Below, in pieces: positions 971 through 31,915 of a stretch of DNA of 39,574 nt. The position numbers and the translations under genes were made by a program. How positions within the stretch are numbered: position 1 is the stretch's first letter; every line of letters begins with the position of its first letter. A model generated the notes under the pieces. It was given only the letters and a program-made list of their open reading frames with translations. It had not been told where the DNA came from and did not search any database. This DNA is from Octopus bimaculoides (taxonomy: Eukaryota). The DNA is taken from the NCBI RefSeq assembly GCF_001194135.2, contig NC_068985.1, positions 16,576,672 to 16,616,245 on the forward strand, given 5' to 3'.

Positions 971-1106
971 GTCCTTTAGCACAAAAATATCGTACCCATT
1001 CTGGTTCTGCAAATGCTGGTTATGGAATGGAAAACTACAACCAAACCACTGCCTTAAATCCAGATTATTCTAATAAAAGTTCATACCAACAACAGAGTTA
1101 TCCTAG
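971..1106 (+). CDS. SEC31: SEC31 internal exon (Pro/Gln/Tyr-rich disordered region), phase 1-2
   Basis: Acceptor tatttttcag|GT and donor CCTAG|gtttgt. Encodes (G)PLAQKYRTHSGSANAGYGMENYNQTTALNPDYSNKSSYQQQSYP. Phase 2 joins the 2707 exon in frame (AG+T=Ser). Identity rests on splicing continuity with the diagnostic downstream exons. The gene starts upstream of the window. Confidence 0.75.
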
Positions 1107-2706: not shown

Positions 2707-2792
2707 TCCAAATTCTTACCAAACTTCAAATACTTATCATCCACAACAACAAATGCAGCCATCCAATGTATACAATCCAATTTCAACACCAG
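2707..2792 (+). CDS. SEC31: SEC31 internal exon, phase 2-1
   Basis: ctatattttag|T CCA AAT ... ACA CCA G|gtaaaa. Encodes PNSYQTSNTYHPQQQMQPSNVYNPISTP. Phases match both neighbours. Confidence 0.8.
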
Positions 2793-4210
2793 GTAAAATA
2801 TTTAATTTTGTCCTATGTAATAATATGCAAGTGTTGTATCATAGTAGTTTTGAAAGTGTGCATGTGTTAATGATTGTGTACTGTTAAAAGTAAAACTAAT
2901 TGTAACAAACATAATAGGGTGGACATACATCATGATTTTAATTCATATCATTCAAGTGTTACTTTTTCTCAGAGATTGTTTATTTTTCAACTTACTTAAA
3001 ACCAGAAACCAGTGAAGAAAATTCTCTGGAAATATGTAGTGTACTGGTGTTGTGCAGAATGCATCGCTTAACCAATTTCTTCCAATTCTAACATTGCATC
3101 CACATGTTTCTGTCTTAAATTATAGGTCAATAGCTTAGCAAGTATGGTTTGGTTACTAGTATAATATTATGATATCCATGATAGACATTAACAGGCAGAA
3201 CAAAAATATATGGGAAAAGAAACACATTATCAGAAGTCTACAAGAACAAGTTACAACTTTTTTGTAGAATCAAGATCTGAAGTTGGAGCTTCTACATCTG
3301 TCTTTACTTACTGTCTTAATTTAAATATATACACTCAGAAGATCCCCATCATTTCATCTTGTTACATATACATGCTAAACCTTCATAAAAATTTCAACCC
3401 AAATATATTGAGAAATTAGTAATTATTTTATGCATTGAGACATAAATATACTCAGAAACTACCAAAAAAGATCATTGTTGTCAGTTGTGTAAAACACCCA
3501 AAAAATTTGAATAAATTTATAATTTACTCTACAAATATGTTTTGTGAAGGTTTAGTTTTCTAAGTTAACAAGGATTAAATGTCTTTATATATATATATAT
3601 ATATATAATACAACCAGATACTCTTCATATTGCTAACCCATACCTGTTTTTCAAGTAATGGATTCTTTAATCCACACATCCTCAAGAGCACAGAGCCAGC
3701 AAACTTATTAAAAGGAAAAGAACAAACCTTAAGGATTATAGCTCAGAGCTTTTTCATTCAAAGTGCGCAGGATATAAACATGCACTCACTCACATACACA
3801 TGACAGGCTTCATATAGTTTTTGTCTAGTAAATTGACTCAAAAGGCATTGGTCAGCTCTGGTCCACAGTAAAAGACTCAGAGGATGCTACACAATAGGAC
3901 TGAAGTCAAGACCACATGATTATTGGTTGTGAAGTGAACTTCTTAACCATAGTCACATCTGCACCCAAACCAAATAACATCAATAAGTAGTCATTTGTCT
4001 GATCCCTGTTTTTTAACTTGCAGAACATCAATTATACAATTAAAGTAGTCAAGTTATTGAAACCCAAAAGCAAATTGTCACACAAAACCATTTGTTTTTC
4101 TTGTTAAAAACATTCATACTGAAAATGTTACAGTAATTTAATGTATTAAATGTTGTTTATACATTGGCAATTTTAGACATATTTTCATTTTTATATTTTC
4201 TGTTTTCTAG

Positions 4211-4323
4211 TAGCTCCACAAGCTTCTGGTCCAATGGGAGATATTCCTTCCTTTCAAGAAATGAAACCTCACACACCTTGGAATGATCCACCTGTGTTTA
4301 AAGATAAAGTGAACAACTCACGT
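4211..4323 (+). CDS. SEC31: SEC31 exon with WNDPP active-fragment motif, phase 1-0
   Basis: ttttctag|TA GCT ... TCA CGT|gtaagt. Encodes (V)APQASGPMGDIPSFQEMKPHTPWNDPPVFKDKVNNSR. WNDPP (4279-4293) matches the conserved Sec31 motif (human SEC31A GWNDPP). Confidence 0.9.
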
Positions 4324-5179
4324 GTAAGTCAATCAAATCTAAAATGAGACACTGGTCTCGTATCCTATTTAGCAAAGTATTTTGTGGTTTTTTTCTTTTC
4401 TTATTATGTATTTAGCTTTTGTTGCAGAAAGTTCTTTTATAATGTGATATAAAGGTTCTTACCAAATATGATGGTTCTTAGATTGATTGCATATATAGTA
4501 AACATTGCAACACTTTTCACATCTCAACTATAGACCTTTTATTATTGATGTAACAATTCATTTTTCTCTTCGTTATCTTTCATGATGTCATTTCAACAAA
4601 ACAATTGAGAAACAAAAATTAAATGTTTGTAAATTCATTATTTTGTCATCTCATCAGAATTTATTCATTGAAATTGTTATTAACATATTCTCAGAGATGT
4701 TTTGTTACAGATAACTAACATTAAATTAGTATCATCATGTATATTTATTCTAATGGTTGAATTACAAATATTTTGTATTATGTTTGCTTTAGGGGTTACA
4801 AAAGTAACTTCTTACTTTTTCTGCTCAAAATATGTAGTAATTTCAATATTTTTCCCCCCAAAACAGGTAGAGAATTACTATGCAGTCATGAAACCTACCA
4901 GAAATAGTAGCCAAAAACACATTAGATAACAATTACACTAGTTATACTTTAATCTGAAATCAAGATTGGATAATCTGGGTTTGAATACCTTTGCTCATAG
5001 ATTAACTGGATCAATAGTTGCCTAAGATTAAACAGCTTTTTTTTCTCAGAGCTTTTTAGGAATTTTGATTATAAAAGATCACCACATTGAGTTTAGCAGT
5101 TTCTCTCACACCTTATTCAAAGTTACATGTTTATAGTATGTGATTATTATTTTTCTAATCTCCGAAATAGTAATAGTCC

Positions 5180-5392
5180 TTTGTACTGTAAGCACAAAGC
5201 TTGAAATTTCGAGGGAGATGGTCAGTTGATTGCATCATCCCCAGTACTGAACTGGATCTTATTTCATCAACCCTGAAAGGATGAAAGACCAAGTTGACCT
5301 TGGCAGAATTTGAACTCAGAATGTAATACCAGAAGAAATGCCACCAAGCATTTTGTCTGGCGTGGTAACAATTGTGCCGGCTTTCTGCCTTC
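5180..5392 (-). mobile_element. tRNA-derived SINE, family B, diverged
   Basis: Reverse complement matches the 37877-38116 copy (ctgagttcaaattctgccaaggtcaac...tttcatcc). Confidence 0.65.
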
Positions 5393-7206
5393 CCCAAAAT
5401 AGTAATAATAATAAATAGTAATGAGCTTATTGTATGGTACTCAGCTGCTAAGTGCTTCTTTGACTTTGTTGCTCATGTAAGCCTGTTGATATAATGAAGG
5501 CTGATATTTATAGATACATAAACTACTAATGAAAGTAACATAATACAATAACTTAAGATTATATTTAATTTAGTTTAAAAGCTGAAATGATGAAATATAA
5601 TTTCAAGGTAAAAGTAAATTTGAATTGTTGTGTATCATGTAACCAATGTTACTGGGAAAACTCTTTGATTACCTCAATTACCATTATTATTAATTTCTTA
5701 CTTAAGTACAATATTTATAGAGGAAGAGAATACTTTTTTGCAAGGATAATAGCAGAGTTTATCTCTTATTCTTTGACTTTTGTCTACTAATGTGGATTGC
5801 AGTTATATAAAAGTTAAAGCTTTTATTTATATGCTTGATATTTTTTATGGCATATGATTATTACTTTTATAATAGTCTGTGTTGTTTGCAGTTCCTTACA
5901 AACTAAAATCACAGAGGAAAATTTTTTAATATTTTAAAAAATTTTAATTATTTGTTATGATTTTATATCATTTTACTAACAAACAAGTTTGAAAATGTTA
6001 ACTTCACCTTGTTCTCTTTAATATTTCTCTTGATTTGCACTTGTTTCATTGAATTAAATTTGGATTGTGTCGCAAAACACAACACAACACAACACAACAC
6101 AAAGCAACATGTCATAAACTGAACTAGATCAATCATTATGATAATGGTTGTGTTACAATTAATAAAAATTATGTTAACATGTTTTTTTTTCAAAGTGACA
6201 CACATAGATTAAGGAAAAACTGCAAATTAATCTGGTTATTTCCTTGGCGAACTTCTGTTTAGAAATTCTTATATTTGAAATAATTGAACATTTTTCAATA
6301 GATAATATATGAATAACATATTTTAATAAGAATTATGCTAAACATCATTGTAGGCTAAACATCTTTTTTTCCATATCTGTTCCAATGTTTGGGGGTCAAA
6401 TGTTGCCTGAGAACTTTTCATAGCTGTTTAGAATGTCTTAAGATATCTATTTTACTTGGGGCAAATGTTAGAACAAAAGCCAATCTAAAAACATTTGCAG
6501 GTTCTATAAATATTCAATAGATAAAGGTGAGATCAATTACTGATAAAGAAAGTAAAAGAAAGGCAAAAATTTTTCATTTATCTACCTTAACTTTGATAAT
6601 AATACTTGATAATATAAAATGGATTTCACCAAGTTTGTTGATAAAGAAAAAAAAACTATTGAATATCAAGAATTTGTCTTGTAAAATTATAAATCTACTT
6701 TCCAATAGGAATAGAAATTTGATGGTACTACAAATTTATAGATATGTATAATAATGTATATATTTTATAGCTAAATATATCATAATATTCACTTCTGGAG
6801 TGGAAAAAATTCACTTCAGTAGATGTAAAGTATGTTGAAAAATGTGTATACCTGAAGAGCACAATGAATGGAAAGGACAAAGTTGAAGTTTAACATTGAA
6901 CTATTTTTAACTTTTAAACCACTGTTAACTTAGTTTCAACTGCAATGGTTTGAAGCAATGGAAATAAAGCAAACAATTGGAAAAGAACAAAATAAAAATA
7001 CACCGTTAGCAGTACTATAAAATATTTTATATTTAAATATTCCATTGAGTTAAGAGTAATCTTTATAATTAACTATGAATAATCTAGAAAATTAAATACT
7101 CAACTAATATTTACTACAATTAGATGGAGTAAATATGGTTCATTCATAAAATAATTCTTCATTAAGGATACATACATATACATATATATATATATATGTA
7201 TGTTTG

Positions 7207-7856
7207 TACTACACTACCTATGACCTGTTGGGTCACCAATAATTCAAGGTACCCGAAGAAACCACAAATCTCGGGAACCAGTGGTCCAATTTACACAAAA
7301 CTTGTTTTATTATGTTTGTATTCACACTTCAATGGTACCTTACTTTCAAAATATTTTCTAATTATGCACCGGTTTGGCTGTAATAAATTACAGACAAGCA
7401 AGCGTGCAAACAAGCAATCATAAAGGTACCTGAGAAAACCGTGTGTCTCAGGAACCTGTGGTTTGATTTACATGAAACATGTCTTATTCCATTTGTATTC
7501 CCATTTCAGGAGCACTTTACTTTCAGAGTATTTTCTAATTATGCACCGGTTTGGCTGTATTAAATTACAGACAAGCACACATGCAAGCACGCACACAAAC
7601 AAAGCTATGCAGGTGTTCACAATAAAGGGCAATAACTCCAGGTTTCACTGCTTCAATTTGTGAAAACAAACCCACAAAAAACATTTATCTTAGGAATCCT
7701 TGGTCTGATTTACATGAAACTTATTTTATTCTGTTTGTATTCCCATTTCAGGGGTATCTTACTTTCAGAGGCTTTTCCCATTATGCGCCAGTTTCGCTGT
7801 ATTAAATTAGACAAGCACGCAAGCAAGCAATCACAGACTTTTAGTATTATATAGAT
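7207..7856. mobile_element. Helentron/DINE-1-like non-autonomous element with ~3 internal tandem units
   Basis: Units begin near 7248, 7425 and 7662 (first period 177 nt), each ending in acagacaagca(agc)n. Short TGACC..GGTCA inverted repeat at 7221-7235. Terminus ttagtattatatagat. The superfamily call is from recalled architecture only. Confidence 0.5.
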
Positions 7857-8179
7857 GTATATATCTCATTTAACATTTCCAAATAATAGACAAACTAATT
7901 GACATGAAAATAACAGTTAATGATTTTGTGTATTGTTTTTTTCTTTATTTTAACAAAAAAAATTTATTGTATAAAACTATTATATTATGTTTTCAACAAT
8001 TGATAAAATAATTTTTCCTGCTTGTCACATTATTTTGCAAATGTTGCTTAATGCAAGCTAGAATGTGATTATTAGTTACCTCTGCACTTAATGCCTGCGT
8101 TGCCTTAAGGTTTTATACAATATTTCCCTAGTGAGAATGTGGTAGTTACATTTTTATTGAGTTATCAATCTCAATATCC

Positions 8180-8640
8180 TTAACCATTTTCCCCCCTACA
8201 TCCTAGATCGAAGGAAAGGGCAGCACTTGTGGCCTTTGCAGGGCCTTCTAGACTGGCGAGAGTGATGCCATTAATGGTACTCTTAAACCTTTGTATGTTA
8301 AACACTTGCTAGAAAGATAGAGCAGGAAGGGGGTTCCAGAGAGGTTCCAAAGAGTTGATGTTCTGGGACGGAAGGACTTGCATAGGGATTAGTGTGAAGC
8401 TTAGGGAGTTGAACAGAACAACGGTGATGAGGAAAAGAGAGGTGAGGGGAATAGAAATGCTGGAGAGTTGGGGTCATGAGCCCAGGCAGCTCTGAGGAGC
8501 AAAAGCCAGATGGTAGCAGTAGAAGAGATGGAGAGGGGGTAGACAGTGTGCCTATGAATCAGTGGTTGGAGCATGTCTGTGAGTGACTCTATGTCAATCA
8601 GTCAAGGGCCCTTTTCTAGACGTACTCTGGGTTGTCTCAT
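8180..8640 (-). mobile_element. Decayed CR1/L2-group LINE ORF2 C-terminus and 3' end
   Basis: The minus strand reads, across frameshifts, LIDIESLTDMLQPLIHRHTV..FYCYH..FCSSEL...RTSTLWNPLP, matching the LQPLSHRR..SLFYRYY.G.CS.EL...RT..LWN.LP pattern of this group. Confidence 0.75.
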
Positions 8641-9234
8641 TACTATTTTGGTCCATGACTGCTATCTTTGCATCAATGATAGTGTGTTCTGGGTAGTTAA
8701 TGTTTATTTGGATATATGAGAGTAGGAAACAAAGCCCTAATGATTGACTTCAAATGATGTAAACAAGAATAACACATCATAGGATGGTGATGAGCCAACT
8801 GCAATAAACAGACCACCAACTTAGAAACATCAAAACCTATATAATATTTATAGAAGATGCTAGAGGAGATATACAGCTCTGTTATGAATAAAGACTAAAG
8901 ATTGTGATAGCATGCACACTGCCAATAAACTAGTTGACATTTTCTGGTTAGCTTTAGATGGGAAATGATAAAATGAAGATGTAGTGATTTGAATATGATT
9001 AAATTAATCAATTTCGTGTATATAAATATACTTTGTTTTGGAGTTGATGTACAAAATAACGAAACTATAAAATATATAATTAACCTTGCTTACTTTTTGT
9101 CAAATCAACATAACGTTTCTATCTATACATATCTGAATGAGGGATTAAATGACTTGTGTGTTTGTGTGTGTGTAATAGTGAATCTCTATTGACAAGGATT
9201 CTGTTATTCAATCAACCAAATTACCAGCTCCTGA

Positions 9235-9515
9235 ATTAATGTGTAAAGGACTGAGTATTCCAAACATGTGTACCCTTATTGTAATTCTCAGGCAGAGTCA
9301 GCATGACACAGGGTGTGACAAGGCGATGCCTCTTGAACTGCTGAGATAATCCACCCAATAGGCTTCTACACAGTTCCCATCTGCCCAGTTTCACTTACTA
9401 AACATGGATTGACCTCAGCTGAGAATATAGTAACATATACTCAAGAGGCCACATAATGGAATTGAACCCAGGATTTTGTGGTGGTGCTATGAACTTCTTA
9501 ATCATATTATACCTG
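9235..9515 (-). mobile_element. Adjacent diverged SINE remnants (families C and A)
   Basis: Reverse complements of SINE segments seen intact at 24485-24810 and 9781-10150. Confidence 0.5.
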
Positions 9516-9650
9516 TGTGTGTATTTATTTATATATATTAGACTTGGTGAGAGCTTATGGTGACAGGTGTATCTCATTTGTTCTGTTACTGATTATCATT
9601 TGATCTTTCTTAACCTAAACAAATCTTCACTCCAACATTGGGTGTATTTA

Positions 9651-9739
9651 TATATATATATATATATATATCTGGGGCTAAAAGCAACAGTAACATCCAC
9701 CCTTAGGGGTCAGCCACATTTAAATGGCAAATATACTTC

Positions 9740-9779
<40 letters not shown>
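9651..9779. repeat. Two (TA)n microsatellites (further TA, GA, CT and CA tracts at 1-22, 849-869, 16212-16235, 27216-27304, 34317-34349)
   Basis: Directly visible dinucleotide runs. Confidence 0.95.
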
Positions 9780-9780
<1 letters not shown>

Positions 9781-9781
<1 letters not shown>

Positions 9782-10150
9782 CGCAGGAGTGGCTGTGTGG
9801 TAAGTAGCTTGCTTACCAACTACATGGTTCCGGGTTCAGTCCCACTGCGTGGCACACTATAGCCTCGGGCCGACCAAAGCCTTGTGAGTGGATTTGGTAG
9901 ACGGAAACTGAAAGAAGCCCGTCGTATATATGTATATATATATGTGTATGTGTGTTTGTGTTTGTCCCCCCACCATCGCTTGACAACCGACGCTGGTGTG
10001 TTTACATCCCTGTAACTTAGCGGTTCGGCAAAAAGAAACCGATAGAATAAGTACTAGGCTTATGAAGAATAAGTCCTGGGGTCGATATGCTCGACTAAAG
10101 GCGGTGCTATAGCATGGCTGCAGTCAAATGACTGAAAGAAGTAAAAGAGT
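9781..10150 (+). mobile_element. Near full-length tRNA-derived SINE, family A, inserted in (TA)n
   Basis: A-box-like tggctgtgtggtaag, B-box-like ggttcagtccc, central (TA/TG)n and tail aatgactgaaagaagtaaaagag. TA tracts on both flanks. Many homologous copies in the window. Confidence 0.85.
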
Positions 10151-10416
10151 AATATATATATATACAATATTGGGTTCAGAACATGAAATGAGTGTGCTGT
10201 ATAACTAAACCAGGAATATTTAGATCTTATCAGTTAAATCAAAAGTTCCACAAGTCTGCATGTGAGGAAAAAAGACTCCAAGATGCTAAGTTCTCATTGA
10301 CAAAGTTTATCCCAAAGAGAATGTAAATCTAAAGTATTTTGCATCTATGCTTATTAAATTTAGCTTTGTGCACTATAAATTTATCCCTTGTAGAACTTCC
10401 ATTTTTATCTCTGTAG

Positions 10417-10464
10417 CATTCAGGCTGGAATGATCCCCCCTTGGTTGACCCGGCACCTGTACAG
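10417..10464 (+). CDS. SEC31: SEC31 48-nt mini-exon with a second WNDPP motif, phase 0-0
   Basis: ccatttttatctctgtag|CAT TCA GGC TGG AAT GAT CCC CCC TTG GTT GAC CCG GCA CCT GTA CAG|gtaagg = HSGWNDPPLVDPAPVQ. Strong acceptor and donor, in frame with both neighbours. Confidence 0.8.
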
Positions 10465-11029
10465 GTAAGGATTTGGTGTATAGGGCCCATTTGTTTATAA
10501 ATTTCTCCTGGAAGTCCTTAAGTCCTTTAGATATTCATATATGCATGAAATCTTCTGCTTCTTTTACCTAATAATATGCATGCGTCCTTACACTATTTTT
10601 TTTTTTTGCATTAGTTCTCAGCAGCTTTTATTACCATTGATTATCTACAAATATTTCATAAGACTTTCTAAAACTCTTCTTTTAATGGATCAGTTTTCTT
10701 TAAATTCATTTTGTTATTTAACATTCTCTGCATGAAACTCAACAAGCATGTTTTCATTATAAATACTTCTTCATATTTAATTCTTCTTTATGTTTAATAT
10801 TGTTTCTTCTGTCTGAGGGTAAGTAAATAACAAATGATGGCATTATATACACTATACACTGAACTGCAAAAATTATCTCAGAATTATCTATTGTTTAATC
10901 TCTGAATAATGCAATCCCTGATTTATTCAAACAAACCAAGAATATTTGATATTATGCATTAGTAAGATTTCTAGTCATCACTTATTCATAAAGTCATCAA
11001 CCAACTATGATTTTTTAAAATTCATTGTT

Positions 11030-11400
11030 ATCATCATCGTCATCGTTTAATGTCCGCTTTCCATGCTGGCATGGGTTGGATGGTTTGCTTGAGGACTTGC
11101 AAGTTGGGAGGCTGCACCAGGCTCCAATCTGATTTGGCAAAGTTTCTACAGCTGGATGCCCTTCCTAACGCCAACCTCTCCAAGAGTGTAGTGGGTGCTT
11201 TTTACATGCCACCAGCACAGGAGCCAGTCAAGTAGCACTGGTACCAGCCATGCTCAAATGGTGCTTTTTGCATGCTACCAGCATGGGTGCCAGTAAGGTG
11301 GCACTGGCATTGGCCACACTTGAAGGTGCTTTTTACATGCCACCAGCACAGGTAGCTGTCAGGCAACACTGGCGTTGGCCATGCTCAAATGGTGCCAGTC
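11030..11400 (-). mobile_element. RTE LINE 3' end (5'-truncated)
   Basis: (cat)n-cgtttaatgtccgctttccatgc tail plus tandem 3' UTR units. Homologous to the 3' UTR attached to RT coding sequence at 22196-23632 and 34770-35622. Confidence 0.8.
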
Positions 11401-12309
11401 ATTTTATACAAAATGATAACTGAAAGATACTAGAAATTTACAAGAGAAAAAAACTCTATGTAGTCACTGGACTTGCTATGAATAGTTGCCAGATCTCCTT
11501 CAATTCTCACTCTTCTATCTCAAATGAGGAAGGTAACATTGGAGAATGTACTCTTAGCTATATTATGAGGCTGAGAATATGCATGGTTATGGCTCAGTAC
11601 TTTTGATCATTTGTCTGTTCAATCAAAGCTGACTTAAAGCTAATCAACAATAATAACCAAAGATTAAGTGGGGGGAAAAAAGCACTTTTGAAGAAAAATA
11701 ACTGCTGATGAGTATGCTCTTTGATGTTGTAAAAACAGAAAATATAATCCTGAAAATAATTTCAAATAAAATTTGTATGTTAATGCCTATAAGTGTCAAC
11801 TTTACTCATACTCTATCACCACTACTTTCAACATCAATCTTATGTGAAGCAACAAAGAAATCAACAAGTCAAGGTAGCTTTAATGTGGTTGTTAGAGATA
11901 TCAATCAATCCAATCCTTTTACATGGGACTTGATTTGTTATAAATAGCAATCAGATATCCCTGCCGTCTTAAGAAAAAAAAAAGGAAGCAACTGTATAAA
12001 TTTATTTTGGTTGTATGTGATTTTTATTTTTTTTGTAAAGTTTCTGTTGTTATTATGAACCAACAAATAAGTCATTAAACCAATAAGGGAACTTCTCTGT
12101 GGTCACATGTGCTGCTTTTTTATTGTTATATTTTGTCACTTTGTCAGAGGTTGAAGGACCAGCCCACCTGACATTTGGAAGGTCTCTGAGACTGAAACCA
12201 TGGCCCAAGAATTACCCTCAGACTAGAGACACGAGCTAAATGCTTACAACAGAACAGACTCTGCTAAAGCACTTAAGGACCTAGTGGTACTATATTAAAT
12301 TTTCAACCA

Positions 12310-12432
12310 GATTCTGCATAGTTTCCATCCACCCAGTTTCACTTACAATACTTGGGTTGACCCAAGGCTATGGTGTCCTGCAGTGGGATCTTGTCTAGAG
12401 CCTTGAGAGTGTGACATAAACTCATTAACCAC
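12310..12432 (-). mobile_element. SINE family A remnant
   Basis: Reverse complement aligns to 9790-9915 (cccactgc..atagcc..gg..accc/aaag..gtgagtg..gatggaaact). Confidence 0.55.
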
Positions 12433-13194
12433 ATAGTTATATTTGTTAGAAATATAGCAGTTGTACTTTATCTGATTTTCCCATCATCTTAAGAAAAATG
12501 TCTGTATGATTGCTACTTCAGCAGTTTGATAAGACTATAAATAGTATCTCTATTACTTGATATGCTATCTATAGATAGCATATTTCTGAGGTTATAAAAT
12601 GAAACCTTGTAGAAACATCTTAACAATTATTTCATATCTTTAACAATGCCATGGGAAGTATTTCATTTCAGGTTGTAGGTGGATCAGAAAACATTTTGAC
12701 ATTTTATAACATACTGTCAAGAAATCAAACAAAATTAAATATAGTGTGTGTGTGTGTTGACTTTTCTCACAATGTAAAGCATTTCAGTTTCAACACATGG
12801 TCTCATAGCAAGCCGTTTGTCAAGCAATTAAAATTCCAACAGTTTTATAATTATGTTGGTGTGTAGTATAGTCTCACAACTGGTTCTAGTTGTGGGAATA
12901 TTTATTTTACAATTGTATCTAAAAACAGCAAGTGTTTAGTTTAAGCCATTGTGGGTTTTAGCCTTGCAGCTGCTTTTATCCTTTTCTGCTTTAGCTTGGA
13001 GAAGGAACAGTGCCCATGACTTTCCCAGGCCCTTCAAGATTGGTGAGATTCATATGAATCAGTTTGAGCATTAATAGACTGACATTTATGGAAATAATGT
13101 AGATGGAGAGGAAATTCCTGATGATTGGCACTCTACAGAAGAAGGATTGGTTAAAAGGGCTAATGTAAATAAAGTGGGGTTGGATTTGGCAATA

Positions 13195-13470
13195 AGATGA
13201 GGGCTCAGGTTCAGTCCCTCTCTATAGCATCTGAGGCAAGCTTTGAAGGTGAAACTGGCTAGACAAGAAATATGAAAGACTCAAATGGATTGTTCTTGCA
13301 ATTCAAAGGGTTTCCTTTGTCTCAGAGCGTCATGCTAATTTAGTCTGAGAACTATGTTAAGAGTACATGTGCTTTTTGAGTACTCAGCCTTTTACATACT
13401 AATTGAATGAGTAGGTAGTTCAGTTGTTCAAATAACTGGGCACTCATCATTAAAACTGATGGAGGACCCT
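13195..13470 (+). mobile_element. SINE family C remnant
   Basis: ggttcagtccc B-box-like segment and gagaactatgttaagagtacatgtg, shared with 24485-24810. Confidence 0.45.
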
Positions 13471-14024
13471 TTGTGCCAGGTCAGAGGACCAGAGGGCTTT
13501 TATAACAACAACAGAACAGGCAGTGAGAGGAGACAGTATGTCTGTGCTCCATTACACTACAAAAAGACTTTCTGAGATACCAGTCTGTTTTTGCTTAAAA
13601 AAGATAGACCGTTAAATTGACATGTTATTCATATTGACCTATGAGTATCCTTCTAAAACAATGGTCAAGACTGAAGAAGGACAGTGGTGCTACAACTATT
13701 GATGAATTAAAGCAACTAATGATGGAACTGGACATGAGCCATTGTCAGTTTCTATACACAGTACAAGTTGTAGACGATCACTCACTCGTTTGTTTTACAT
13801 TTACAACACACACACAAGTACATACTGAGGCATTGCTTTACAGCTGGATGCTGTTCCTTTCACTAACCTTTCTCTGTTTTATTTTTAGTAAGGAGTTTTC
13901 ATTCCACTTATCTTCAAGTGTGGGGCTGCTGTAATATTTGCTGACACAAAGATGTAAACAAACATCACTGTCAATAGCTTAGCTCTGTGCAGAATTCAGA
14001 CATTCAAATTGGCATGCATATGCA

Positions 14025-14345
14025 TGCAGTACACTTTGTAAAGGGGTGGGCATTAGGCAGAGCATTCAGCTGCAAAAACCATGCCAAAACAGACAGTGAA
14101 GCTTGGTGCAGTCCTGTCAAACCATCCAGTCCATGCCAGCATGGAAGATGGATGTTAAATGATGATGATGATGATGTGCATATACACACACACACATGAA
14201 AGGCTTTGTGCAATTTCCATCTATCTAATTCATTTACAAAGGATTGCTCAACCTGGGGCTACAGTAGAAGACATTTGCCCAAGGTGCCATACTCAAGGAC
14301 TGAACTCTAAACCACATGGTTTTGAAGTGAACTTCTTGATCAAAC
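14025..14345. mobile_element. Diverged RTE 3' end (+, to 14176) followed by SINE A remnant (-)
   Basis: ccatgccagcatggaagatggatgttaaatgatgatgatgat tail, then the reverse complement of the SINE A head. Confidence 0.6.
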
Positions 14346-14755
14346 TGCCAAACCTGCTCCAATCAATGGTGATAATTCATATTGATTAATAATGCTCAAC
14401 TTCATATTATAAAAAAAAAATGTGTTTCTTTTTACAAATTATTTTCTGCCTTTATTTCTAACTTTCATTAACTACGTGTTCACCAAAGAGTGAATATTTG
14501 AACTTTATTATAATGCTAAAATTCATTAACCGTTTAACAACAATCACATTGTATTGATATGATATTGTTTTCATGTTCAGTCTCCTGTAGGTGCACCAAA
14601 CATCATATATTTGAGAGAGACTGAAAATTAAACTAAAAATCGCCTTTTAATATTAATGGTTTCTTCTATCTACAGACTTACCTGAATTAAGCTTATGTTA
14701 TTTTTAGAAAATTACCTGTAGAGCTGCTGTTAATCTTTGCTTATGTAAATTGCAG

Positions 14756-14881
14756 CAATTTGAATCTCCAAATGCAATTCCCAATCAAATGTATGGAATT
14801 CCTGGAAACACTGATCAACAACAACCTGTCAACAGTTATCCAAACATTTACAACCCCCAGGAACATCAGCCTCAATTGCCG
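14756..14881 (+). CDS. SEC31: SEC31 exon, phase 0-0
   Basis: aaattgcag|CAA TTT GAA ... TTG CCG|gttaga. 42 codons, QFESPNAIPNQMYGIPGNTDQQQPVNSYPNIYNPQEHQPQLP, followed by a 100-nt intron. Confidence 0.82.
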
Positions 14882-14981: not shown

Positions 14982-15119
14982 CAATCAGCACCTGTAGTTA
15001 ACCCAGCTCCAGAACCTGTACCTGAAGTTGTAAAAGGACCTTTGCCAAATGAACATCAAATTTTACAAGAGATATTTGATGCCTTGGTTGAAAACTGTTT
15101 AAAAGTTGCATCAAATGCT
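14982..15119 (+). CDS. SEC31: SEC31 exon, start of C-terminal helical domain
   Basis: tgtttgtag|CAA TCA ... AAT GCT|gtaagt. QSAPVVNPAPEPVPEVVKGPLPNEHQILQEIFDALVENCLKVASNA resembles human SEC31A KKPIPDEHLILKTTFEDLIQRCLSSA. Confidence 0.92.
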
Positions 15120-16100: not shown

Positions 16101-16172
16101 CAAACTAAAAGAAAACTGGAAGACGTAGTTAAGAAACTGGAAGCGTTATATGACAAGCTAAGAGAAAATGCG
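16101..16172 (+). CDS. SEC31: SEC31 penultimate coding exon
   Basis: tcatatttag|CAA ACT ... AAT GCG|gtatga. QTKRKLEDVVKKLEALYDKLRENA resembles human QTKRKLDDASKRLEFLYDKLRE. Confidence 0.95.
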
Positions 16173-16539: not shown

Positions 16540-16799
16540 CATCATCATCATCGTTTAACGTCCGCTTTCCATGCTAGCATGGGTTGGACGATTTGACTGA
16601 GGACTGGTGAAACCGGATGGCAACACCAGGCTCCAATCTAATTTGGCAGAGTTTCTACAGCTGGATGCCCTTCCTAACGCCAACCACTCAGAGAGTGTAG
16701 TGGGTGCTTTTACGTGTCACCCGCACGAAAATGGCCACGCTCGAAATGGTGTCTTTTATGTGCCACCCGCACAAGCCAGTCCAGGGGCACTGGCAACGA
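16540..16799 (-). mobile_element. Young RTE LINE 3' end
   Basis: Intact (cat)n tail; nearly identical to 39347-39574. Confidence 0.85.
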
Positions 16800-17050
16800 A
16801 ATATTAACTTATCACTAAATATACATAATCCCTTTTGATTTTCTTTTCTACTCCCATCATATCATACCTAGCTTCTCACTCGTAGCATCCACCATTTTTT
16901 GTAGACCTAAAAGATGTAATCAAGAACATTTTTATGTGTCTAGGAAGAAGCAGACTTTGTTGTCTTTCTGTTTTTTTTTTTCTTTTTTTCAAGCATTTTT
17001 TCACCCTCTATTTAAGTAAACATTTCCATCTTTTATATTGTTTATTTCAG

Positions 17051-17233
17051 CTGTCCCAGAACATCATTCAAGGCTTGCATCAAATTGTACAATCATTGCA
17101 ACAATATGACTATGATAGAGGACTACAAATCCATGCTCACATGATTAAGCATGGAAATTTTTCTGAAATTGGAAGCTTTATGCCTAGTCTAAAAGTATTA
17201 ATGCAAACAGCAAACAATCTTCAAGTACGATGA
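17051..17233 (+). CDS. SEC31: SEC31 terminal coding exon
   Basis: tttatttcag|CTG TCC ... GTA CGA TGA. LSQNIIQGLHQIVQSLQQYDYDRGLQIHAHMIKHGNFSEIGSFMPSLKVLMQTANNLQVR* resembles the human SEC31A C-terminus (SNFSETSAFMPVLKVVLTQANKLGV). Confidence 0.95.
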   Translation: MSQNIIQGLHQIVQSLQQYDYDRGLQIHAHMIKHGNFSEIGSFMPSLKVLMQTANNLQVR

Positions 17234-23650: not shown

Positions 23651-23834
23651 ATCATCATCACCATCATCGTTTAATGTCCGCTTTCCATGCTAGCATGGGT
23701 TGGATGATTTGACTGAGGACTGGTGAAACCAGATGGCTACACCAGGCTCCAATCTGATTTGGCAGAGTTTCTACAGCTGGATGCCCTTCCTAACGCCAAC
23801 CACTCAGAGAGTGTAGTGGGTGCTTTTACATGTC
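23651..23834 (-). mobile_element. RTE LINE 3' end running into an assembly gap
   Basis: (cat)n tail and consensus 3' terminus. Confidence 0.8.
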
Positions 23835-24922: not shown

Positions 24923-25150
24923 CTGACTGGTCCCTGTGCTGTTGACATGTAAAAAGCACTATCCAAATGTGATCGATGCCAGGCCTGCCTGCCCGACTGG
25001 CTCCTGTGCCAATGGCATGTAAAAAGCACCTACTACACTCTTGGAGTGGTTGGCGTTAGGAAGGGCATCCAGCTGTAGAAACATTGCCAGATCTGATTGG
25101 AGCCTGGTGCAGCTGCATGGAAAACGGACATTAAACGATGGTGATGATGA
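24923..25150 (+). mobile_element. RTE LINE 3' end with internal deletion
   Basis: ggcgttaggaagggcatccagctgtagaa ... ggacattaaacgatggtgatgatga, followed by (TA)n. Confidence 0.75.
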
Positions 25151-25189
25151 TATATATATACATATATATATATACACATGCATATATAT

Positions 25190-25450
25190 TGCTCAGTGGG
25201 TAAGGTGTTGCACTTATATTGCAAAATCATGGGTTCAATTCCCAGACTGGATGTTGCTTTGTGTTCTTGAGCAAAGTGCTTCATTTCATGTTGTTCAGTG
25301 TTCATTTCGTCATCTGACATGTGGCACCCATTGCACCTGCACCTGTACAGGTAATGTCGATTTGATGGAGGGAGTGAGCTTATGTCTACACAAACGTTTG
25401 ATCACTATAAACAAATCATCTGTGTGGTCTTTCGGTATGAAATTGTCAAA
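25190..25450 (+). mobile_element. tRNA-derived SINE, family C-like
   Basis: gctcagtgggtaagg..gggttcaattccc..gttcttgagcaaagtgcttcatttcatgttg. Confidence 0.6.
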
Positions 25451-25555
25451 CTTTTATATGTCATTTTAAGGCAGGAGAGTCCATCATTTAATATGTATAT
25501 ATTATGTATATATATGTAAGCACAAGTGTGGCTGTGTGGTAAGAAGCTTGCTTCC

Positions 25556-27017
25556 GGTTACTGCACATGCATTGATTCAGTTGCTGGTTTGTTTCTTTTG
25601 AGAGTCAGACGGAAATTTTGTGCTGCTTGGTAGCGGTTTAGAGAAAATGTATTCAGACCTTAGTGGGTCTGAGTTGTCTTCAGTGGAAGAGGAGCTGGTG
25701 AAGGCGGTGAGAAGAATAGACGGAATATTGGAGAGAACAAGAAATTTTTCTGAAGCGACGGAGGTGGAGAGAAAGGATGTAGACCTAGCTGGACTAAAGG
25801 AAAATGGAAAAATGATGCAGAGAGTGGGCAGTGATGTGAAGTTGTTGCCCCTCTAAAAGAATTATGGAGCAAATGGAGAGGAAAACTATTACCTATAGGA
25901 TGCACTCGCTCAAGAACAAAAAGGCTGAACAGGTGGAAGCGGAAATAATAGAAGAAGCACTAAGGAAACAGTTGAACCAAAGGATGTATATAACCAAAGG
26001 ATGTAAATACAGGACGGTGGTCGTCCAGTTTAGGACAGTGAAGGAGGCAAGAAGGCTGGCGAGTGTGGCGGTGAGGACGGAAGAGGTGGTGCTTCTGCCC
26101 ACATATCTTGGAAGAAAGACTTCCAAGCAATCCCACCTGATATAGAAATGGCTTGGGTCGTGGCAGCCATCCTTGTTGGAAGTGAGGAGGAGGTGGCTGT
26201 CCTCCAAGCCACGAAAATGGAAGAAGGAGGATGGAAAAGGAAATCACTGGATCTTATCATGCAGGCAGAGGAGAAGCAGCTAGAGAGTCTGGCAGAGACG
26301 GTGACGTTGGGAGAAATTGTGTTAAGAGTGTGGGTGGAGGGCAGAGTCCCACGTTGTTTTAAATGTGGCCAAAGGGGCAACATTAGAGCACAATAGAAGA
26401 AAACAATAGATGAGACAACAGATGAAGCAGTTGTGGAGACAGAGGAGAAAAGGGAGGAAGAAAAGACAGGCGGGGGAAAGGAGGAAGAATGGGCAGCAGC
26501 AGAGAGTAGAAGGAAGAAGAGGAAGAAAAGAAAGAACACTGAGTATGATGTGGTACCCCAGTCCAACTCCATCCCACCCAAGACCACTCAGACCCACCCT
26601 CTCCACACAGACAACAAACCCACCCACCCCCTTTTCCCACAGGAAAAAAAGAAAAAGAAAAAAGAGAAGACACCACAGAATTCAGAAGACTCCTTCCCTG
26701 GTGAAAAAGGTTACAAAAGAGTGTTGTCATTGAGCGGTAGCGAGAGTGGAAATAGAAGGACTAGAAACGGGACTAAAGAGAAATTAGGACTCAGTGGTGG
26801 CGAGTGGTGTTACTCAGTGTGGGGTGAGTAGCACACTCTTCATATTTTCATTTTCAGATATCATGCATGTTATCATAACCTTTATTTTTCTCATGTTTAT
26901 TTTCACATCACTCATAGTATCATATTTAATTTTTACATATTTTTAATTGTTATATGTCCCCCACATGTCTTGTAGTGTCCCCTCTATGTTATGCCTTTAT
27001 GGCAAAATATTGAAATA
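25556..27017 (+). mobile_element. ORF1-only non-LTR retroelement (HAL1-like) with decayed gag-like ORF1 (about 25647-26831), inserted in a SINE A head
   Basis: Broken ORF with a zinc-knuckle remnant CFKCGQRGNIRAQ* and a K/E-rich tail with EEW..ESRRKKRK. A short T-rich 3' UTR ends at AATAAA. Direct repeat aagaagcttgctt at 25541-25553 and 27018-27030. No RT or endonuclease sequence seen. Confidence 0.75.
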
Positions 27018-27565: not shown

Positions 27566-28605
27566 TGTATATATGCGTGTGTGTGTGTGTTACTTTCTCT
27601 TAAATCACACTTACTACAGTCTTTAAAAATTGAAGGACACAATGTAATTCATGGTCATGGTCATGGTTAGAATGCCTTTAATCCTAAGTCTACCGAAGCA
27701 TAACTAAACCTCAGTTTAAACAGTAACATGTAAGGGAACATCTGTGTAGTAACTAATGGCAGAATTTCTGAGTGGTCATCATGTCTGCAAGAAAAAGCAG
27801 GTAAATCTTACCCTAAATCTCTCAAATCTTAAAACAATGGACACATATACACAGGCTTTTATCATAGGTTTGGGAATCGTCCATACTCTGGGAATCAACT
27901 GCTAATGAAACCCACTTCACTGTAGATTAACCAGCTAAATGTAGAGCCAGTGTTGCTTCAAACCACATCCTACAACTTTCAAACTACAGAATATAGTTCC
28001 TGATATACAGAAATATGGATGGAAGGCTTTCATAGTGGGTCTACTCAAACTAGAAATAACCAGACAAATTTCCCCCAGATTACTCATCCTACCGTCTATC
28101 AAAAGGAAGGTCATCATGTATGAAAACCAATGTCAGTGACAAATGCATTATCCTAAAGATAGCGTGTTTGCGCTAGTGTGTGTGTGTGTGTGTGTGTGTA
28201 TACTCGCGTACACACACATATGAACTTTAATTCAACCTGTGTATATTTTATCGTTTATTATTAAATTCATTACATATGCTTATCAAAGTACACTGATAAA
28301 AAAGTAGACCAGCATGACATGAATGGAGCAAAATTACCATCATACAGATATTATTTTGGTATCTTTGAGAAAATTTATAAAATCTATAATAATTCTATTT
28401 GCTTTGTGTACTATTTTGAATGTCCAATTAAAAAGAATTTTGCATATTTCAAAGATAAGATTTGGCAATTTTCGTTTTATAGATAAATTGTACGAAAGTA
28501 AACCGGATATTGATAATAGTTGTTGATTAAATATATGTATCAGGTGTCCTTTGATTCTGCTTCAAATAGCATTCGTGTTGCCGTCCTGTGAACTACCCCT
28601 GCAAT

Positions 28606-28818
28606 ATGTCAAAAACACTCAAATTCAGCATGGATATGACCTGTGATGGCTGTACGTCGGCTGCAAAGAGGGTCCTCCAAAAGGCCGAAAATATTGAAAA
28701 CGTTGATGCGAGTTACGAGACCAAAACTGTGTTAGTTACAACAACACAGACCTCTGACTATGTTTTGGAATTTTTAAAGAAAACCGGGAAAACTGTCACA
28801 TATGTTGGAACAGTGTAG
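28606..28818 (+). CDS. ATOX1: Copper chaperone ATOX1/Atx1 (HMA domain), 70 aa, single coding exon
   Basis: MSKTLKFSMDMTCDGCTSAAKRVLQK...LKKTGKTVTYVGTV*. Has the MxCxxC Cu-binding motif and the conserved KKTGK end, as in human ATOX1 (FSVDMTCGGC...LKKTGKTVSYLG). True ATG at 28606; the ORF-track start at 28588 is a GTG extension. Confidence 0.93.
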   Translation: MSKTLKFSMDMTCDGCTSAAKRVLQKAENIENVDASYETKTVLVTTTQTSDYVLEFLKKTGKTVTYVGTV

Positions 28819-30739: not shown

Positions 30740-31328
30740 GGGGCTAATGCAGTTTCGATGCAAAAAAATTTTATCCCCCTCCCCCCATTAAAATTTTTGA
30801 TTTTGTTTACTTTAAAGATATCGTAATGAATTGACGAACATATGCAGATCGAAATTAAATACAGACAAAAACATTAAAGTGAAACGAATTTGCGTTTTAC
30901 TTGTGTTTGCCTTAAATAATCGTAAATAATAATTTAATGTAAATTAAATGTACACTATTTTATGAGAAACAAACAATGTTTAATAATTAATGTTATAAAG
31001 TTTAATAAGTGGCTCAAAATTCACCCCTTCCCCCAATTTTAAATTTTGAACTTCATATGTATTTATCGATCTCTTTATACACATATCTGTATGCTTATTG
31101 AATTTAAAATTTTGAAAACGTGGTTTATTGCTTATTCGAAATCTCTGTCATCTAAAACATAGGGGGAAAAAAATTCGGAAAAGTTCAAAATTTTTAAGGA
31201 GGTGGGGGGGATTAAATCTTTTTTATTTGCATATTCGTAATCTCTGACATCCAAAACGTAGATTACGAAAAAGTTTTTTTTCTTAAAAATGCATTTTTCA
31301 AGGAGAGGTGCGAAACTGCATTAGCCCC
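30740..31328. mobile_element. MITE / non-autonomous DNA transposon, 589 bp
   Basis: Perfect 18-bp terminal inverted repeats ggggctaatgcagtttcg (30740-30757) and cgaaactgcattagcccc (31311-31328). Internal C-rich/aaattttgaactt motifs occur in both orientations. No ORF. Confidence 0.75.
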
Positions 31329-31689
31329 GATTTTTGAATTACATTGGTTCTAATGATGTAATTGGCAAAGAAACTGACAGTGCAGCTAGCAATTGCTGCA
31401 TTCACATCTAATCGGAATGATTGTGTGTGTGTGTGTATGACAGTTTTTGCAATGACTTTATATTTCTATTTATTATACATTTAATAGATGGTCTGTAAAA
31501 TATTATGGAAATATTTAATAGTGGAACTTTCAAAATATCTTTTTGTAATTTTGTATTCATTTCAAATGTGTGTGTGTGTAAAAGATCACCTCACAAAAGT
31601 CTGGCGCAGACATCTGCATAAATACATACTCATGAATACTGTATGTGCATTTTAAATGGTTTTTGCGACTCTTCAGTTTTTCTACAAGT

Positions 31690-31915
31690 AAAAGTACTAT
31701 TGTTGAGTCCTAGGGGACACGCAGGGCCAGTACCCCAGTTTCCATGGCTCATAAGTGACCAAGATCACATTTTCCATGAACAGGACAGCAAACCACCACA
31801 GGGTGACCCATTTACAGCTGAGTAGACTGGAGCAGTGTGAAATGAAATATTTTGCTCAAGAATACAATGCACCACCCACTCTGGGAATCGAAACCACAAT
31901 CTTGTGATTACAATA
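31690..31915 (-). mobile_element. tRNA-derived SINE, family C
   Basis: Reverse complement has ggtttcgattcccag, gtattcttgagcaaa and tgctccagtctactcagctgtaaatggg. Confidence 0.65.

What the first reader, a model, noticed from the sequence alone, without database searches (positions are those of the whole stretch)
10417..10464. A 48-nt SEC31 mini-exon adds a second WNDPP GAP-stimulating motif, possibly a splice-tunable COPII switch
Seen: an isolated exon with strong splice sites, 6 kb and 4.3 kb from its neighbours, encoding HSGWNDPPLVDPAPVQ. It places a second W-N-D-P-P 18 residues after the first (PHTPWNDPPVFKDKVNNSR|HSGWNDPP). It is phase 0-0, so skipping keeps the frame and leaves the usual single motif followed by QFESP. 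No PPP triplets occur in the exons visible here. Established: the Trp-Asn of the Sec31 active fragment binds Sec23/Sar1 and accelerates GTP hydrolysis; the human SEC31A and yeast Sec31 fragments as I recall them have one such motif. Inference: a duplicated, possibly alternatively spliced motif could change coat avidity or the Sar1 timer, for example in neurons or in tissues exporting very large cargo such as haemocyanin. I cannot tell from the sequence whether the tandem motif is already known in other molluscs.
Basis: partly seen in the sequence, partly recalled or inferred. Interest (0 to 1): 0.75.

Follow-up and report, generated by a model that had tools for sequence, protein, structure and literature searches.

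The report
SEC31 mini-exon with second W-N motif
A 48-base exon inside a long intron of a mollusc-type SEC31 gene encodes a second copy of the short Trp-Asn motif that speeds up the GTPase timer of the COPII vesicle coat, which none of 89 related proteins examined has; whether it is spliced in always, sometimes or never could not be tested here.

Summary
Window 10417-10464 (+) is a 48-nt, phase 0-0 open segment flanked by a pyrimidine-rich acceptor and the best donor in the interval. It encodes HSGWNDPPLVDPAPVQ and lies between two SEC31 exons. W-N-[DE]-P-P occurs only twice in six frames (0.0035 expected), so this is not chance.

The first motif (exon 4211-4323) is the ancestral one. The mini-exon motif is an addition. 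It is absent from the homologous intron of two gastropod genomes and from all 89 SEC31/SRA1-family proteins covering this region.

Inclusion does more than add a motif. It moves the ancestral W from the usual 23 residues to 39 residues from the conserved downstream segment, and puts the new W at 21. The new motif lacks the basic linker found in 76 of 78 relatives.

Three TGCATG hexamers within 270 nt downstream (P about 6e-4), the frame-preserving length and the GC contrast suggest a regulated cassette exon. No transcript or orthologue of the source lineage could be reached, so inclusion is unproven.

Splice tuning of the Sec31 active fragment is already known in vertebrates (SEC31A exon 24c). 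The tandem W-N is the new part: a new variant of a known kind, of moderate interest.

The parts
10417..10464 (+). 48-nt mini-exon, phase 0-0, encoding HSGWNDPPLVDPAPVQ. The second W-N-D-P-P is at 10426-10440.
   Evidence: GC is 0.58 against 0.31 in the flanks.
10394..10416 (+). Acceptor region: pyrimidine-rich tract (80% C/T) ending in ctgtag. An AG 24 nt further upstream (10391-10392) would bring in an in-frame TAG if it were used.
10465..10473 (+). Donor CAG|gtaaggatt, the top-scoring donor of 566 GT sites in the 4324-14755 interval.
   Evidence: rough consensus matrix written from memory.
10542..10734 (+). Three + strand TGCATG hexamers (10542, 10577, 10729), 78-265 nt downstream of the donor, with a UCUU-rich tract between the first two. 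A fourth lies at 10257, 160 nt upstream of the acceptor. This is a candidate RBFOX-type intronic splicing enhancer.
   Evidence: Poisson P about 6e-4; about 1% of 300-nt windows reach 3; not a tandem repeat. That these sites function is inferred.
4211..4323 (+). Obligatory exon c, carrying the ancestral motif ...SFQEMKPHTPWNDPPVFKDKVNNSR (WNDPP at 4279-4293). It has a tagtag tandem acceptor (start 4211 or 4214).
   Evidence: Skipping it shifts the frame.
14756..14881 (+). Exon e. Its start, QFESPNAIPNQMYG (14765-14797 = SPNAIPNQMYG), aligns with the conserved P-I-T-x-P-I/[FY]-G segment of the active fragment.
971..1106 (+). Exon a (Gln/Asn/Tyr-rich disordered region).
2707..2792 (+). Exon b (disordered region), ending in phase 1.
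14982..15119 (+). Exon f, start of the C-terminal SRA1/Sec31 domain (…KGPLPNEHQILQEIFDALVENC…).
16101..16172 (+). Exon g (QTKRKLEDVVKKLEALYDKLRENA).
17051..17233 (+). Last coding exon, ending in TGA.

Best explanation
The segment is a genuine, selectively maintained coding micro-exon of a lophotrochozoan (mollusc-type) SEC31 gene. It arose after the split from gastropods, inside the intron that follows the exon carrying the ancestral active-fragment W-N motif. It is most likely a regulated cassette exon.

When skipped, the protein has the standard Sec31 active fragment: one W-N, a basic linker, and the conserved downstream segment 23 residues after W.

When included, 16 residues are inserted 10 residues after WNDPP. 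The ancestral W-N and its basic linker move 16 residues further from the downstream Sec23-contacting segment. A new G-W-N-D-P-P, followed by an acidic/neutral Pro-rich linker, sits at nearly the canonical distance (21).

The predicted consequence is an active fragment in a different register. The new W-N would be the one positioned at the Sec23-Sar1 catalytic site. The old W-N would act as a spare or competing ligand just upstream. This would change the affinity for the inner coat, the stimulation of Sar1 GTP hydrolysis, or both.

Shown: the anatomy, non-randomness, reading frame, spacing, charge, and absence in relatives. Inferred: expression, regulation, and the effect on Sec23/Sar1.
For: (1) Motif statistics: two WN[DE]PP in six frames against 0.0035 expected, both in the SEC31 frame and strand.

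(2) All six residues of the family-wide GWNDPP core are intact, while the flanks share nothing with exon c beyond 11 nt (TGGAATGATCC) and the two Pro codons differ. This is the pattern of an old copy kept by purifying selection, not of a decaying duplicate.

(3) Exon signals: the best donor of 566 GT sites, an 80% pyrimidine tract, and the largest exon/flank GC contrast.

(4) The mini-exon is phase 0-0, and both isoforms reach the same stop. Exon c cannot be skipped.

(5) Exon c carries the lophotrochozoan signature S[FY]Q[DE]xKPxx-WNDPP and the same intron position as Plakobranchus and Littorina. Their homologous introns (1.5 and 1.0 kb) and whole loci hold no second motif.

(6) Spacing from W to the I of the P-I-T-x-P segment is 23-26 in 42 of 50 relatives. 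The skip isoform gives 23. Inclusion gives 21 for the new W and 39 for the old W. Of 78 relatives, 76 have K/R within 10 residues after WNDPP; exon c has net +2, the mini-exon has net -1 and no K/R.

(7) Three TGCATG lie within 300 nt downstream, a density reached by about 1% of 300-nt windows here, and they are not part of a repeat.

(8) Precedent: vertebrate SEC31A exon 24c (39 nt, 13 aa) at the active fragment is tissue-specific and alters lipid transport. RBFOX2 also regulates a Sec31a exon.
Against: - No transcript, EST or protein from the source species or a close relative could be retrieved. Inclusion is therefore untested.
- No orthologous locus from the same lineage was available to test conservation of the exon or of the TGCATG cluster.
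- The strong splice sites would also fit a constitutive exon.
- The new motif lacks the basic linker and sits 2 residues closer than almost all relatives, so it may be a weaker or non-equivalent ligand.
- The TGCATG cluster was noticed post hoc.
- The donor matrix was written from memory.
- An upstream AG (24 nt before the acceptor) would introduce a stop codon if used.
Confidence: 0.55

Rival explanations
1. The mini-exon is constitutive. In this lineage SEC31 always carries two tandem W-N motifs, and there is no splice switch.
For: The donor is very strong (rank 1 of 566) and the pyrimidine tract is good. The exon/intron GC contrast is high. Nothing here demonstrates skipping.
Against: The exon is short, symmetrical (3n, phase 0-0) and flanked by 6.1- and 4.3-kb introns. 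It has a cluster of TGCATG just downstream, which is a typical profile of regulated cassette exons. The skip isoform reproduces exactly the canonical family spacing of 23, which suggests the single-motif form is still in use. Vertebrates regulate an exon at the same functional site.
Confidence: 0.27
2. The segment is an unused relic or pseudo-exon: a remnant of an old partial duplication of exon c that is not spliced into mature mRNA.
For: No expression evidence is available. The motif is absent from all relatives surveyed. Its linker is atypical, non-basic and shorter.
Against: The flanks have lost all similarity to exon c, yet the 6-residue core, the open frame, the AG and the consensus GTAAGG are all intact. 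That is hard to explain without selection. It is the best donor in 10.4 kb. The sharp GC peak is confined to the 48 nt.
Confidence: 0.13
3. The segment is a chance open frame that happens to spell WNDPP, or a fragment of a repeat or transposable element.
For: Introns here are rich in repeats: a SINE-like family occurs in many copies.
Against: Expected WN[DE]PP is 0.0035 per window in any frame, before requiring the right strand, the right intron, frame-compatible AG/GT and a preceding Gly. The mini-exon with 300-nt flanks has no other copy of the exon in the window; only short matches to positions 5-53 of the flank were found. It is not a tandem repeat.
Confidence: 0.02
4. The mini-exon and exon c are mutually exclusive alternative exons, with one W-N exon chosen per transcript.
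For: Both encode the same motif, as tandem-duplicated mutually exclusive exons often do.
Against: Exon c is 113 nt (phase 1 to 0) and the mini-exon is 48 nt (phase 0 to 0). Omitting exon c shifts the frame and gives a stop after 6 codons, with or without the mini-exon.
Confidence: 0.01

Closest known systems
Vertebrate SEC31A exon 24c (Ostwaldt et al., RNA 2025, PMC12265942)
   Same: It is a frame-preserving micro-exon (39 nt, 13 aa) in the disordered region of Sec31, at the active fragment that contacts Sec23/Sar1. It is tissue-specific and controlled by intronic elements downstream of the exon. It changes COPII output, measured as lipid transport.
   Different: Exon 24c lies upstream of W-N (residues about 989-1001, with W at 1008) and contains no W-N. 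It is regulated by RBM47. The exon here lies downstream of the ancestral W-N, in a different intron, and carries its own GWNDPP. It therefore has an independent origin and a different predicted mode of action.
Yeast/human Sec31 active fragment (Bi et al. 2007, PDB 2QTV; Stancheva et al. 2020, PMC7594496; Hutchings et al. 2018/2021)
   Same: Both have the W-N core that inserts at the Sec23-Sar1 interface to accelerate GTP hydrolysis, embedded in a fragment of about 50 residues within a multivalent disordered region.
   Different: All described fragments have one W-N. Here two lie 18 residues apart, too close for two complete 50-residue fragments. The second lacks the basic linker.
Other alternative events in SEC31: SEC31A exon 24 alternative 5' splice site (Neumann 2019, cited), the RBFOX2-regulated Sec31a exon 23/21 (PMC9771820), and the Littorina saxatilis X1/X2 36-aa cassette
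   Same: They show that the Pro-rich region of SEC31 is a recurrent target of alternative splicing, including by RBFOX.
   Different: None duplicates the catalytic motif. The Littorina cassette lies about 70 residues downstream of W.
SRA1 protein (SRAP)
   Same: It shares the GWNDPP motif and the PF07304 C-terminal domain with SEC31 (the SRA1 sequence is recalled from memory).
   Different: It is a short protein with a single motif and no Pro/Gln-rich upstream exons. The window's gene aligns with full-length SEC31 proteins through the disordered region.

Membership tests
SEC31 (COPII outer-coat subunit) gene | C-terminal SRA1/Sec31 helical domain | tested here: met
   Pfam PF07304 scores 23.6 bits against a cutoff of 23.3. 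Identity to SEC31 C-termini is 40-48%.
SEC31 (COPII outer-coat subunit) gene | Disordered Pro/Gln-rich region containing the W-N-D-P-P motif, upstream of the C-terminal domain | tested here: met
   Exons a-e. The alignment covers this region in full-length Sec31A of Littorina, Larinioides and Logan transcripts.
SEC31 (COPII outer-coat subunit) gene | N-terminal WD40 propeller and alpha-solenoid | not testable with these tools
   These lie upstream of the window. Only the 3' half of the gene is present.
Sec31 active fragment (GAP-stimulating W-N motif) | Invariant W-N-[DE]-P-P core, usually preceded by G | tested here: met
   The core is present in both copies. The mini-exon has G-W-N-D-P-P, the majority form among the 78 relatives.
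Sec31 active fragment (GAP-stimulating W-N motif) | Basic linker within 10 residues after WNDPP (76 of 78 relatives) | tested here: not met
   Mini-exon copy: LVDPAPVQQF, no K/R, net -1. Exon c copy: VFKDKVNNSR, net +2, which meets the feature.
Sec31 active fragment (GAP-stimulating W-N motif) | Canonical distance (23-26, range 20-31) from W to the conserved P-I-T-x-P-[IVLMF] segment | tested here: inconclusive
   The skip isoform gives 23, which meets the feature. With inclusion the new W is at 21, the low edge (2 of 50 relatives are at 22 or less). The old W is at 39, outside the range except for two outliers.
Sec31 active fragment (GAP-stimulating W-N motif) | Binds Sec23-Sar1 and accelerates GTP hydrolysis | not testable with these tools
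   This needs biochemistry or complex modelling. Only single-chain structure prediction was available.
Regulated cassette micro-exon (as SEC31A exon 24c) | Frame-preserving length with functional AG/GT, both isoforms open | tested here: met
Regulated cassette micro-exon (as SEC31A exon 24c) | Transcripts both with and without the exon | not testable with these tools
   No RNA data or proteins from the source lineage are in the collections.
Regulated cassette micro-exon (as SEC31A exon 24c) | Intronic regulatory elements next to the exon | tested here: inconclusive
   There is a TGCATG cluster downstream. Without an orthologue, no conservation test was possible.
Regulated cassette micro-exon (as SEC31A exon 24c) | Positional homology with exon 24c | tested here: not met
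   Exon 24c precedes W-N. This exon follows the ancestral W-N.
Tandem-duplicated mutually exclusive exons | Same length and phase, so that one substitutes for the other | tested here: not met
   The exons are 113 nt (phase 1-0) and 48 nt (phase 0-0). Omitting exon c shifts the frame.

The most novel reading that the evidence does not exclude
This would be the first natural Sec31 with a tandem catalytic W-N. It would be delivered by a lineage-specific, RBFOX-type regulated micro-exon that switches the active fragment between two registers: a canonical basic-linker form and a shorter, non-basic form with a spare upstream W-N. That would set the Sar1 GTPase timer or coat avidity per tissue. It would be an independent, convergent invention of the vertebrate exon 24c principle, but acting on the catalytic motif itself.
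Probability: 0.3. Interest if true: 0.72.

Novelty: new variant of a known kind. Interest (0 to 1): 0.55.

Why it matters
How COPII balances coat stability against GTP-driven disassembly, and how it adapts to different cargo, is an open question. The Sec31 active fragment is the element that sets the hydrolysis rate. Vertebrates were recently shown to tune it with a tissue-specific micro-exon.

A natural protein with one or two W-N motifs, depending on a 48-nt exon, would give a ready-made pair of variants to test three things:
- whether motif number, register or linker charge controls GAP stimulation and inner-coat avidity;
- whether two W-N motifs can bridge neighbouring Sec23-Sar1 protomers;
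- whether splice tuning of this site evolved convergently in protostomes and vertebrates.

If the exon proves constitutive or silent, the finding is a lineage curiosity.

Tried and rejected
- **Source-lineage proteins.** The word-indexed protein search with the spliced 255-aa C-terminus found no SEC31 from the source lineage. Best identities were 43-48%. The exhaustive profile search of 1.84 billion representatives also found none: best 45%, with 0 of 78 motif-bearing hits carrying two motifs.
- **Exact-protein look-up.** The window's ATOX1-like ORF is not on record. A 91%-identical ATOX1 exists in Logan run SRR11869385, on a contig colinear with the window at 77% nt identity. The run number appears in no paper.
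- **Organism identification.** A search with the retroelement ORF gave unnamed hits only.
- **Metagenome/metatranscriptome scan.** The scan for two WNDPP codon strings 8-18 residues apart gave 16 loci. All are satellite-like repeats or unrelated repeat proteins, and none has a SEC31 C-terminal domain.
- **PDB sequence search.** The 96-aa active-fragment region gave no hits. Bi et al. 2007 is not held in the library.
- **Rfam scan.** No hits in the window.
- **Literature searches.** 'WNDPP', Sec31 plus octopus, and cephalopod microexons gave nothing on a duplicated motif.
- **Recent-duplication hypothesis.** Rejected: there is no flank similarity.
- **Mutually exclusive exons.** Rejected by phase.
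- **My own error.** My first exon b boundary was one base short and briefly made the exon-c-skipped form look in frame. This was corrected.
- **Structure prediction.** Not used. The region is disordered and only single chains can be modelled.

Full report
**What is in the sequence**

Window 10417-10464 (+) reads ...ccatttttatctctgtag|CATTCAGGCTGGAATGATCCCCCCTTGGTTGACCCGGCACCTGTACAG|gtaaggatt... and translates to HSGWNDPPLVDPAPVQ. The upstream exon ends at 4323 with ...SFQEMKPHTPWNDPPVFKDKVNNSR|gtaagt. The next exon starts at 14756 with QFESPNAIPNQMYG.

I rebuilt the whole 3' half of the gene. The exons are:
- a: 971-1106
- b: 2707-2792
- c: 4211-4323
- mini: 10417-10464
- e: 14756-14881
- f: 14982-15119
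- g: 16101-16172
- h: 17051-17233

All have AG/GT borders. With and without the mini-exon, the reading frame runs to the same TGA. Omitting exon c shifts the frame, so exon c is obligatory and the two W-N exons are not mutually exclusive alternatives. An off-by-one error in my first exon b boundary was corrected. The two introns around the mini-exon are 6093 and 4291 nt and contain no assembly gaps.

**The gene**

The C-terminal 125 residues match Pfam PF07304 (SRA1/Sec31) just above the curated cutoff. The spliced 255-aa product is 40-48% identical to SEC31 C-terminal halves. These include Sec31A of the gastropods Plakobranchus ocellatus and Littorina saxatilis and full-length Logan transcripts. 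The WD40/solenoid part lies outside the window.

I could not name the source organism. Nothing closer than 45-48% was found for SEC31. The only close relative I found is an unnamed Logan run whose ATOX1 contig is colinear with window 27990-31715 at 77% nucleotide identity.

**Is it more than chance?**

WN[DE]PP occurs exactly twice in the six-frame translation of the window, both times on the + strand in the SEC31 frame. The expectation from 2000 composition-preserving shuffles is 0.0035.

- The mini-exon's donor (CAG|GTAAGG) is the best of 566 GT sites between exons c and e. It is better than the donors of the neighbouring exons by a rough consensus matrix that I wrote from memory.
- The acceptor has an 80% pyrimidine tract.
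- The 48 nt are 58% GC in a 31% GC context, the sharpest exon/flank contrast of all eight exons.
- The segment is not part of a dispersed or tandem repeat.
- The flanks share nothing with the flanks of exon c. Only 11 nt (TGGAATGATCC) are common, and the two Pro codons differ.

If this is a duplicate of part of exon c, it is therefore old. Yet the six-residue core, the open frame and both splice sites have survived. That pattern argues for purifying selection, and so for use as an exon.

**Which motif is ancestral, and how widespread is a double motif?**

Exon c carries the signature seen in the closest relatives, S[FY]Q[DE]xKPxxAWNDPP followed by a basic linker. It ends at the same intron position as in Plakobranchus and Littorina, 10-13 residues after PP. 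In those two genomes the homologous intron is only 1.5 and 1.0 kb. The entire loci (27.6 and 39.9 kb, six frames) contain a single W-N-D-P-P.

- None of the 78 motif-bearing proteins among the 11 first-search hits plus the best 150 of an exhaustive profile search of 1.84 billion cluster representatives has two motifs.
- Adding the isoform sets of Littorina, the spider Larinioides and Logan transcripts gives 0 of 89. None of those isoforms varies at the motif.
- A scan of the JGI metagenome/metatranscriptome collection for two WNDPP codon strings 8-18 residues apart returned only satellite-like repeats and unrelated repeat proteins.
- The literature searches found no report of a duplicated W-N.

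The second motif is thus a derived, apparently lineage-restricted addition. There is one caveat: the lineage itself is missing from every collection I could query.

**What inclusion would do to the protein**

Established facts, from papers read here:
- The active fragment spans about 50 residues of the disordered region.
- It lies across Sec23 and Sar1 and inserts W922/N923 (and L925) at the catalytic interface to accelerate GTP hydrolysis.
- PPP motifs and basic clusters provide further, partly redundant contacts.

In 50 relatives that have the conserved downstream P-I-T-x-P-[IVLMF] segment, the distance from W to its Ile is 23-26 in 42 cases. Of 78 relatives, 76 have Lys/Arg within ten residues after WNDPP, typically net +2 to +3.

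| | W-to-Ile distance | Linker after WNDPP | Net charge |
|---|---|---|---|
| Skip isoform | 23 | VFKDKVNNSR | +2 |
| Inclusion, ancestral W | 39 | VFKDKVNNSR | +2 |
| Inclusion, new W | 21 | LVDPAPVQQF | -1, no K/R |

The skip isoform is fully canonical. With inclusion, the ancestral W moves outside the normal range and the new W lands at the low edge of it.

The two Trp are 18 residues apart and a full fragment needs roughly 23-25 residues on each side of W-N. By inference, the two motifs cannot both be engaged as complete fragments. The most economical reading is a register swap rather than a simple doubling. The mini-exon's W-N would take the catalytic position with a different linker. The old W-N would become a nearby spare or competitor. 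Whether this raises avidity, speeds or slows the Sar1 timer, or bridges neighbouring inner-coat protomers cannot be decided in silico with the tools available.

**Constitutive, alternative or silent?**

Features pointing to a regulated cassette:
- It is 48 nt, a multiple of three, and phase 0-0.
- It is flanked by long introns.
- The skip product is exactly canonical.
- Three + strand TGCATG hexamers lie 78, 113 and 265 nt downstream of the donor, and one lies 160 nt upstream. Only 21 such sites occur on this strand of the whole window. About 1% of 300-nt windows reach three, and the Poisson P is about 6e-4. The other such place is a low-complexity stretch at 38.8 kb.

UGCAUG downstream of an exon is the classical RBFOX enhancer arrangement (established knowledge, not tested here). 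RBFOX2 regulates a Sec31a exon in mouse and human liver. Against this, the cluster was noticed post hoc, and strong splice sites fit a constitutive exon equally well.

My estimates are about 0.55 for a regulated exon, 0.27 for a constitutive exon, 0.13 for an unused relic, and 0.03 or less combined for chance, a repeat or mutually exclusive exons.

**Comparison with what is known**

The closest known system is vertebrate SEC31A exon 24c. [quoted passage not shown] It is highly tissue-specific, activated by RBM47 through a downstream intronic element, and promotes lipid transport. [quoted passage not shown]

The principle of a splice-tunable COPII switch at the active fragment is therefore already known. 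What differs here:
- the exon lies in a different intron, after rather than before the ancestral W-N;
- it carries a copy of the catalytic motif itself;
- it occurs in a protostome.

This implies independent origin. I therefore classify it as a new variant of a known kind.

**Limits**

All three word-indexed protein searches, the single exhaustive search and the single metagenome scan are spent. No RNA-seq, no orthologous locus of the source lineage and no complex modelling were available. The decisive tests are junction counts by tissue, conservation of the 48 nt and the TGCATG cluster in sister genomes, and GAP/binding assays with one-motif, two-motif and W-to-A variants.

Noticed in passing
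window 28606-28818 (+): An intact single-exon ORF of 70 aa with a heavy-metal-associated domain and an MTCDGC metal-binding motif, i.e. an ATOX1-like copper chaperone (Pfam HMA, E 7e-10). A 91%-identical protein lies on a Logan contig (SRR11869385, L019). That contig is colinear with window 27990-31715 at about 77% nucleotide identity, so a related species exists in Logan.
   Followed up: partly
window 4209-4213 (+): The acceptor of exon c is a tagtag tandem (NAGNAG) acceptor. Either AG keeps the frame, giving ...STPVAPQ... or ...STPAPQ..., a possible one-residue isoform difference.
   Followed up: partly
window, e.g. 11011-11232, 16601-16804, 23717-23830, 34838-35269, 39416-39574 (+), and several copies on the - strand: A SINE-like dispersed repeat is present in many copies on both strands. 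Its translation reads GLVKPDGNTRLQSDLAEFLQLDALPNANHSESVVGAF.... It fills much of the introns and intergenic space.
   Followed up: no
window 33709-34266 (+): A 186-aa open frame combines a retroelement-type tail (LPKQLLYGELEDGRR...) with C2H2-like zinc fingers (weak Pfam hits). The closest relative is an unnamed Logan protein at 53% identity. It sits between assembly gaps.
   Followed up: partly
window 25000-27000: A GC-rich island (0.41-0.45 against about 0.33 elsewhere, with strong positive GC skew) carries long Lys/Arg/Glu-rich open frames on both strands (for example 25840-26142 and 26410-26730). It could be a low-complexity repeat or the start of another gene.
   Followed up: no
L009 (JGI contig Ga0181573_10160239), - strand, 309-aa open frame: An unknown protein built of QSEW[DN] repeats. 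Four consecutive units read QSEWNDPPxKGKQPS, that is W-N-D-P-P plus a basic cluster in tandem. It has no SEC31 C-terminal domain and its relation to COPII is unknown.
   Followed up: partly
L002 10001-11107 (ENA contig ctg30332l): An intronless 368-aa ORF equals the spliced 3' half of a SEC31 (single HSGWNDPPLL motif) fused to an unrelated N-terminus. It is probably a processed retrocopy in an unidentified eukaryote.
   Followed up: partly
L020 25194-25304 (Littorina saxatilis SEC31A): Littorina isoforms X1 and X2 differ by a 36-aa cassette exon (PSIPSYNPPPASNSYNPLPAGTLTPASTQPSHTPKP) about 70 residues downstream of W-N. This shows alternative splicing of the SEC31 disordered region in another mollusc.
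   Followed up: partly
window 10391-10392 (+): An AG lies 24 nt upstream of the mini-exon acceptor. If used, it would extend the exon through an in-frame TAG. This is a possible unproductive alternative 3' splice site.
   Followed up: no
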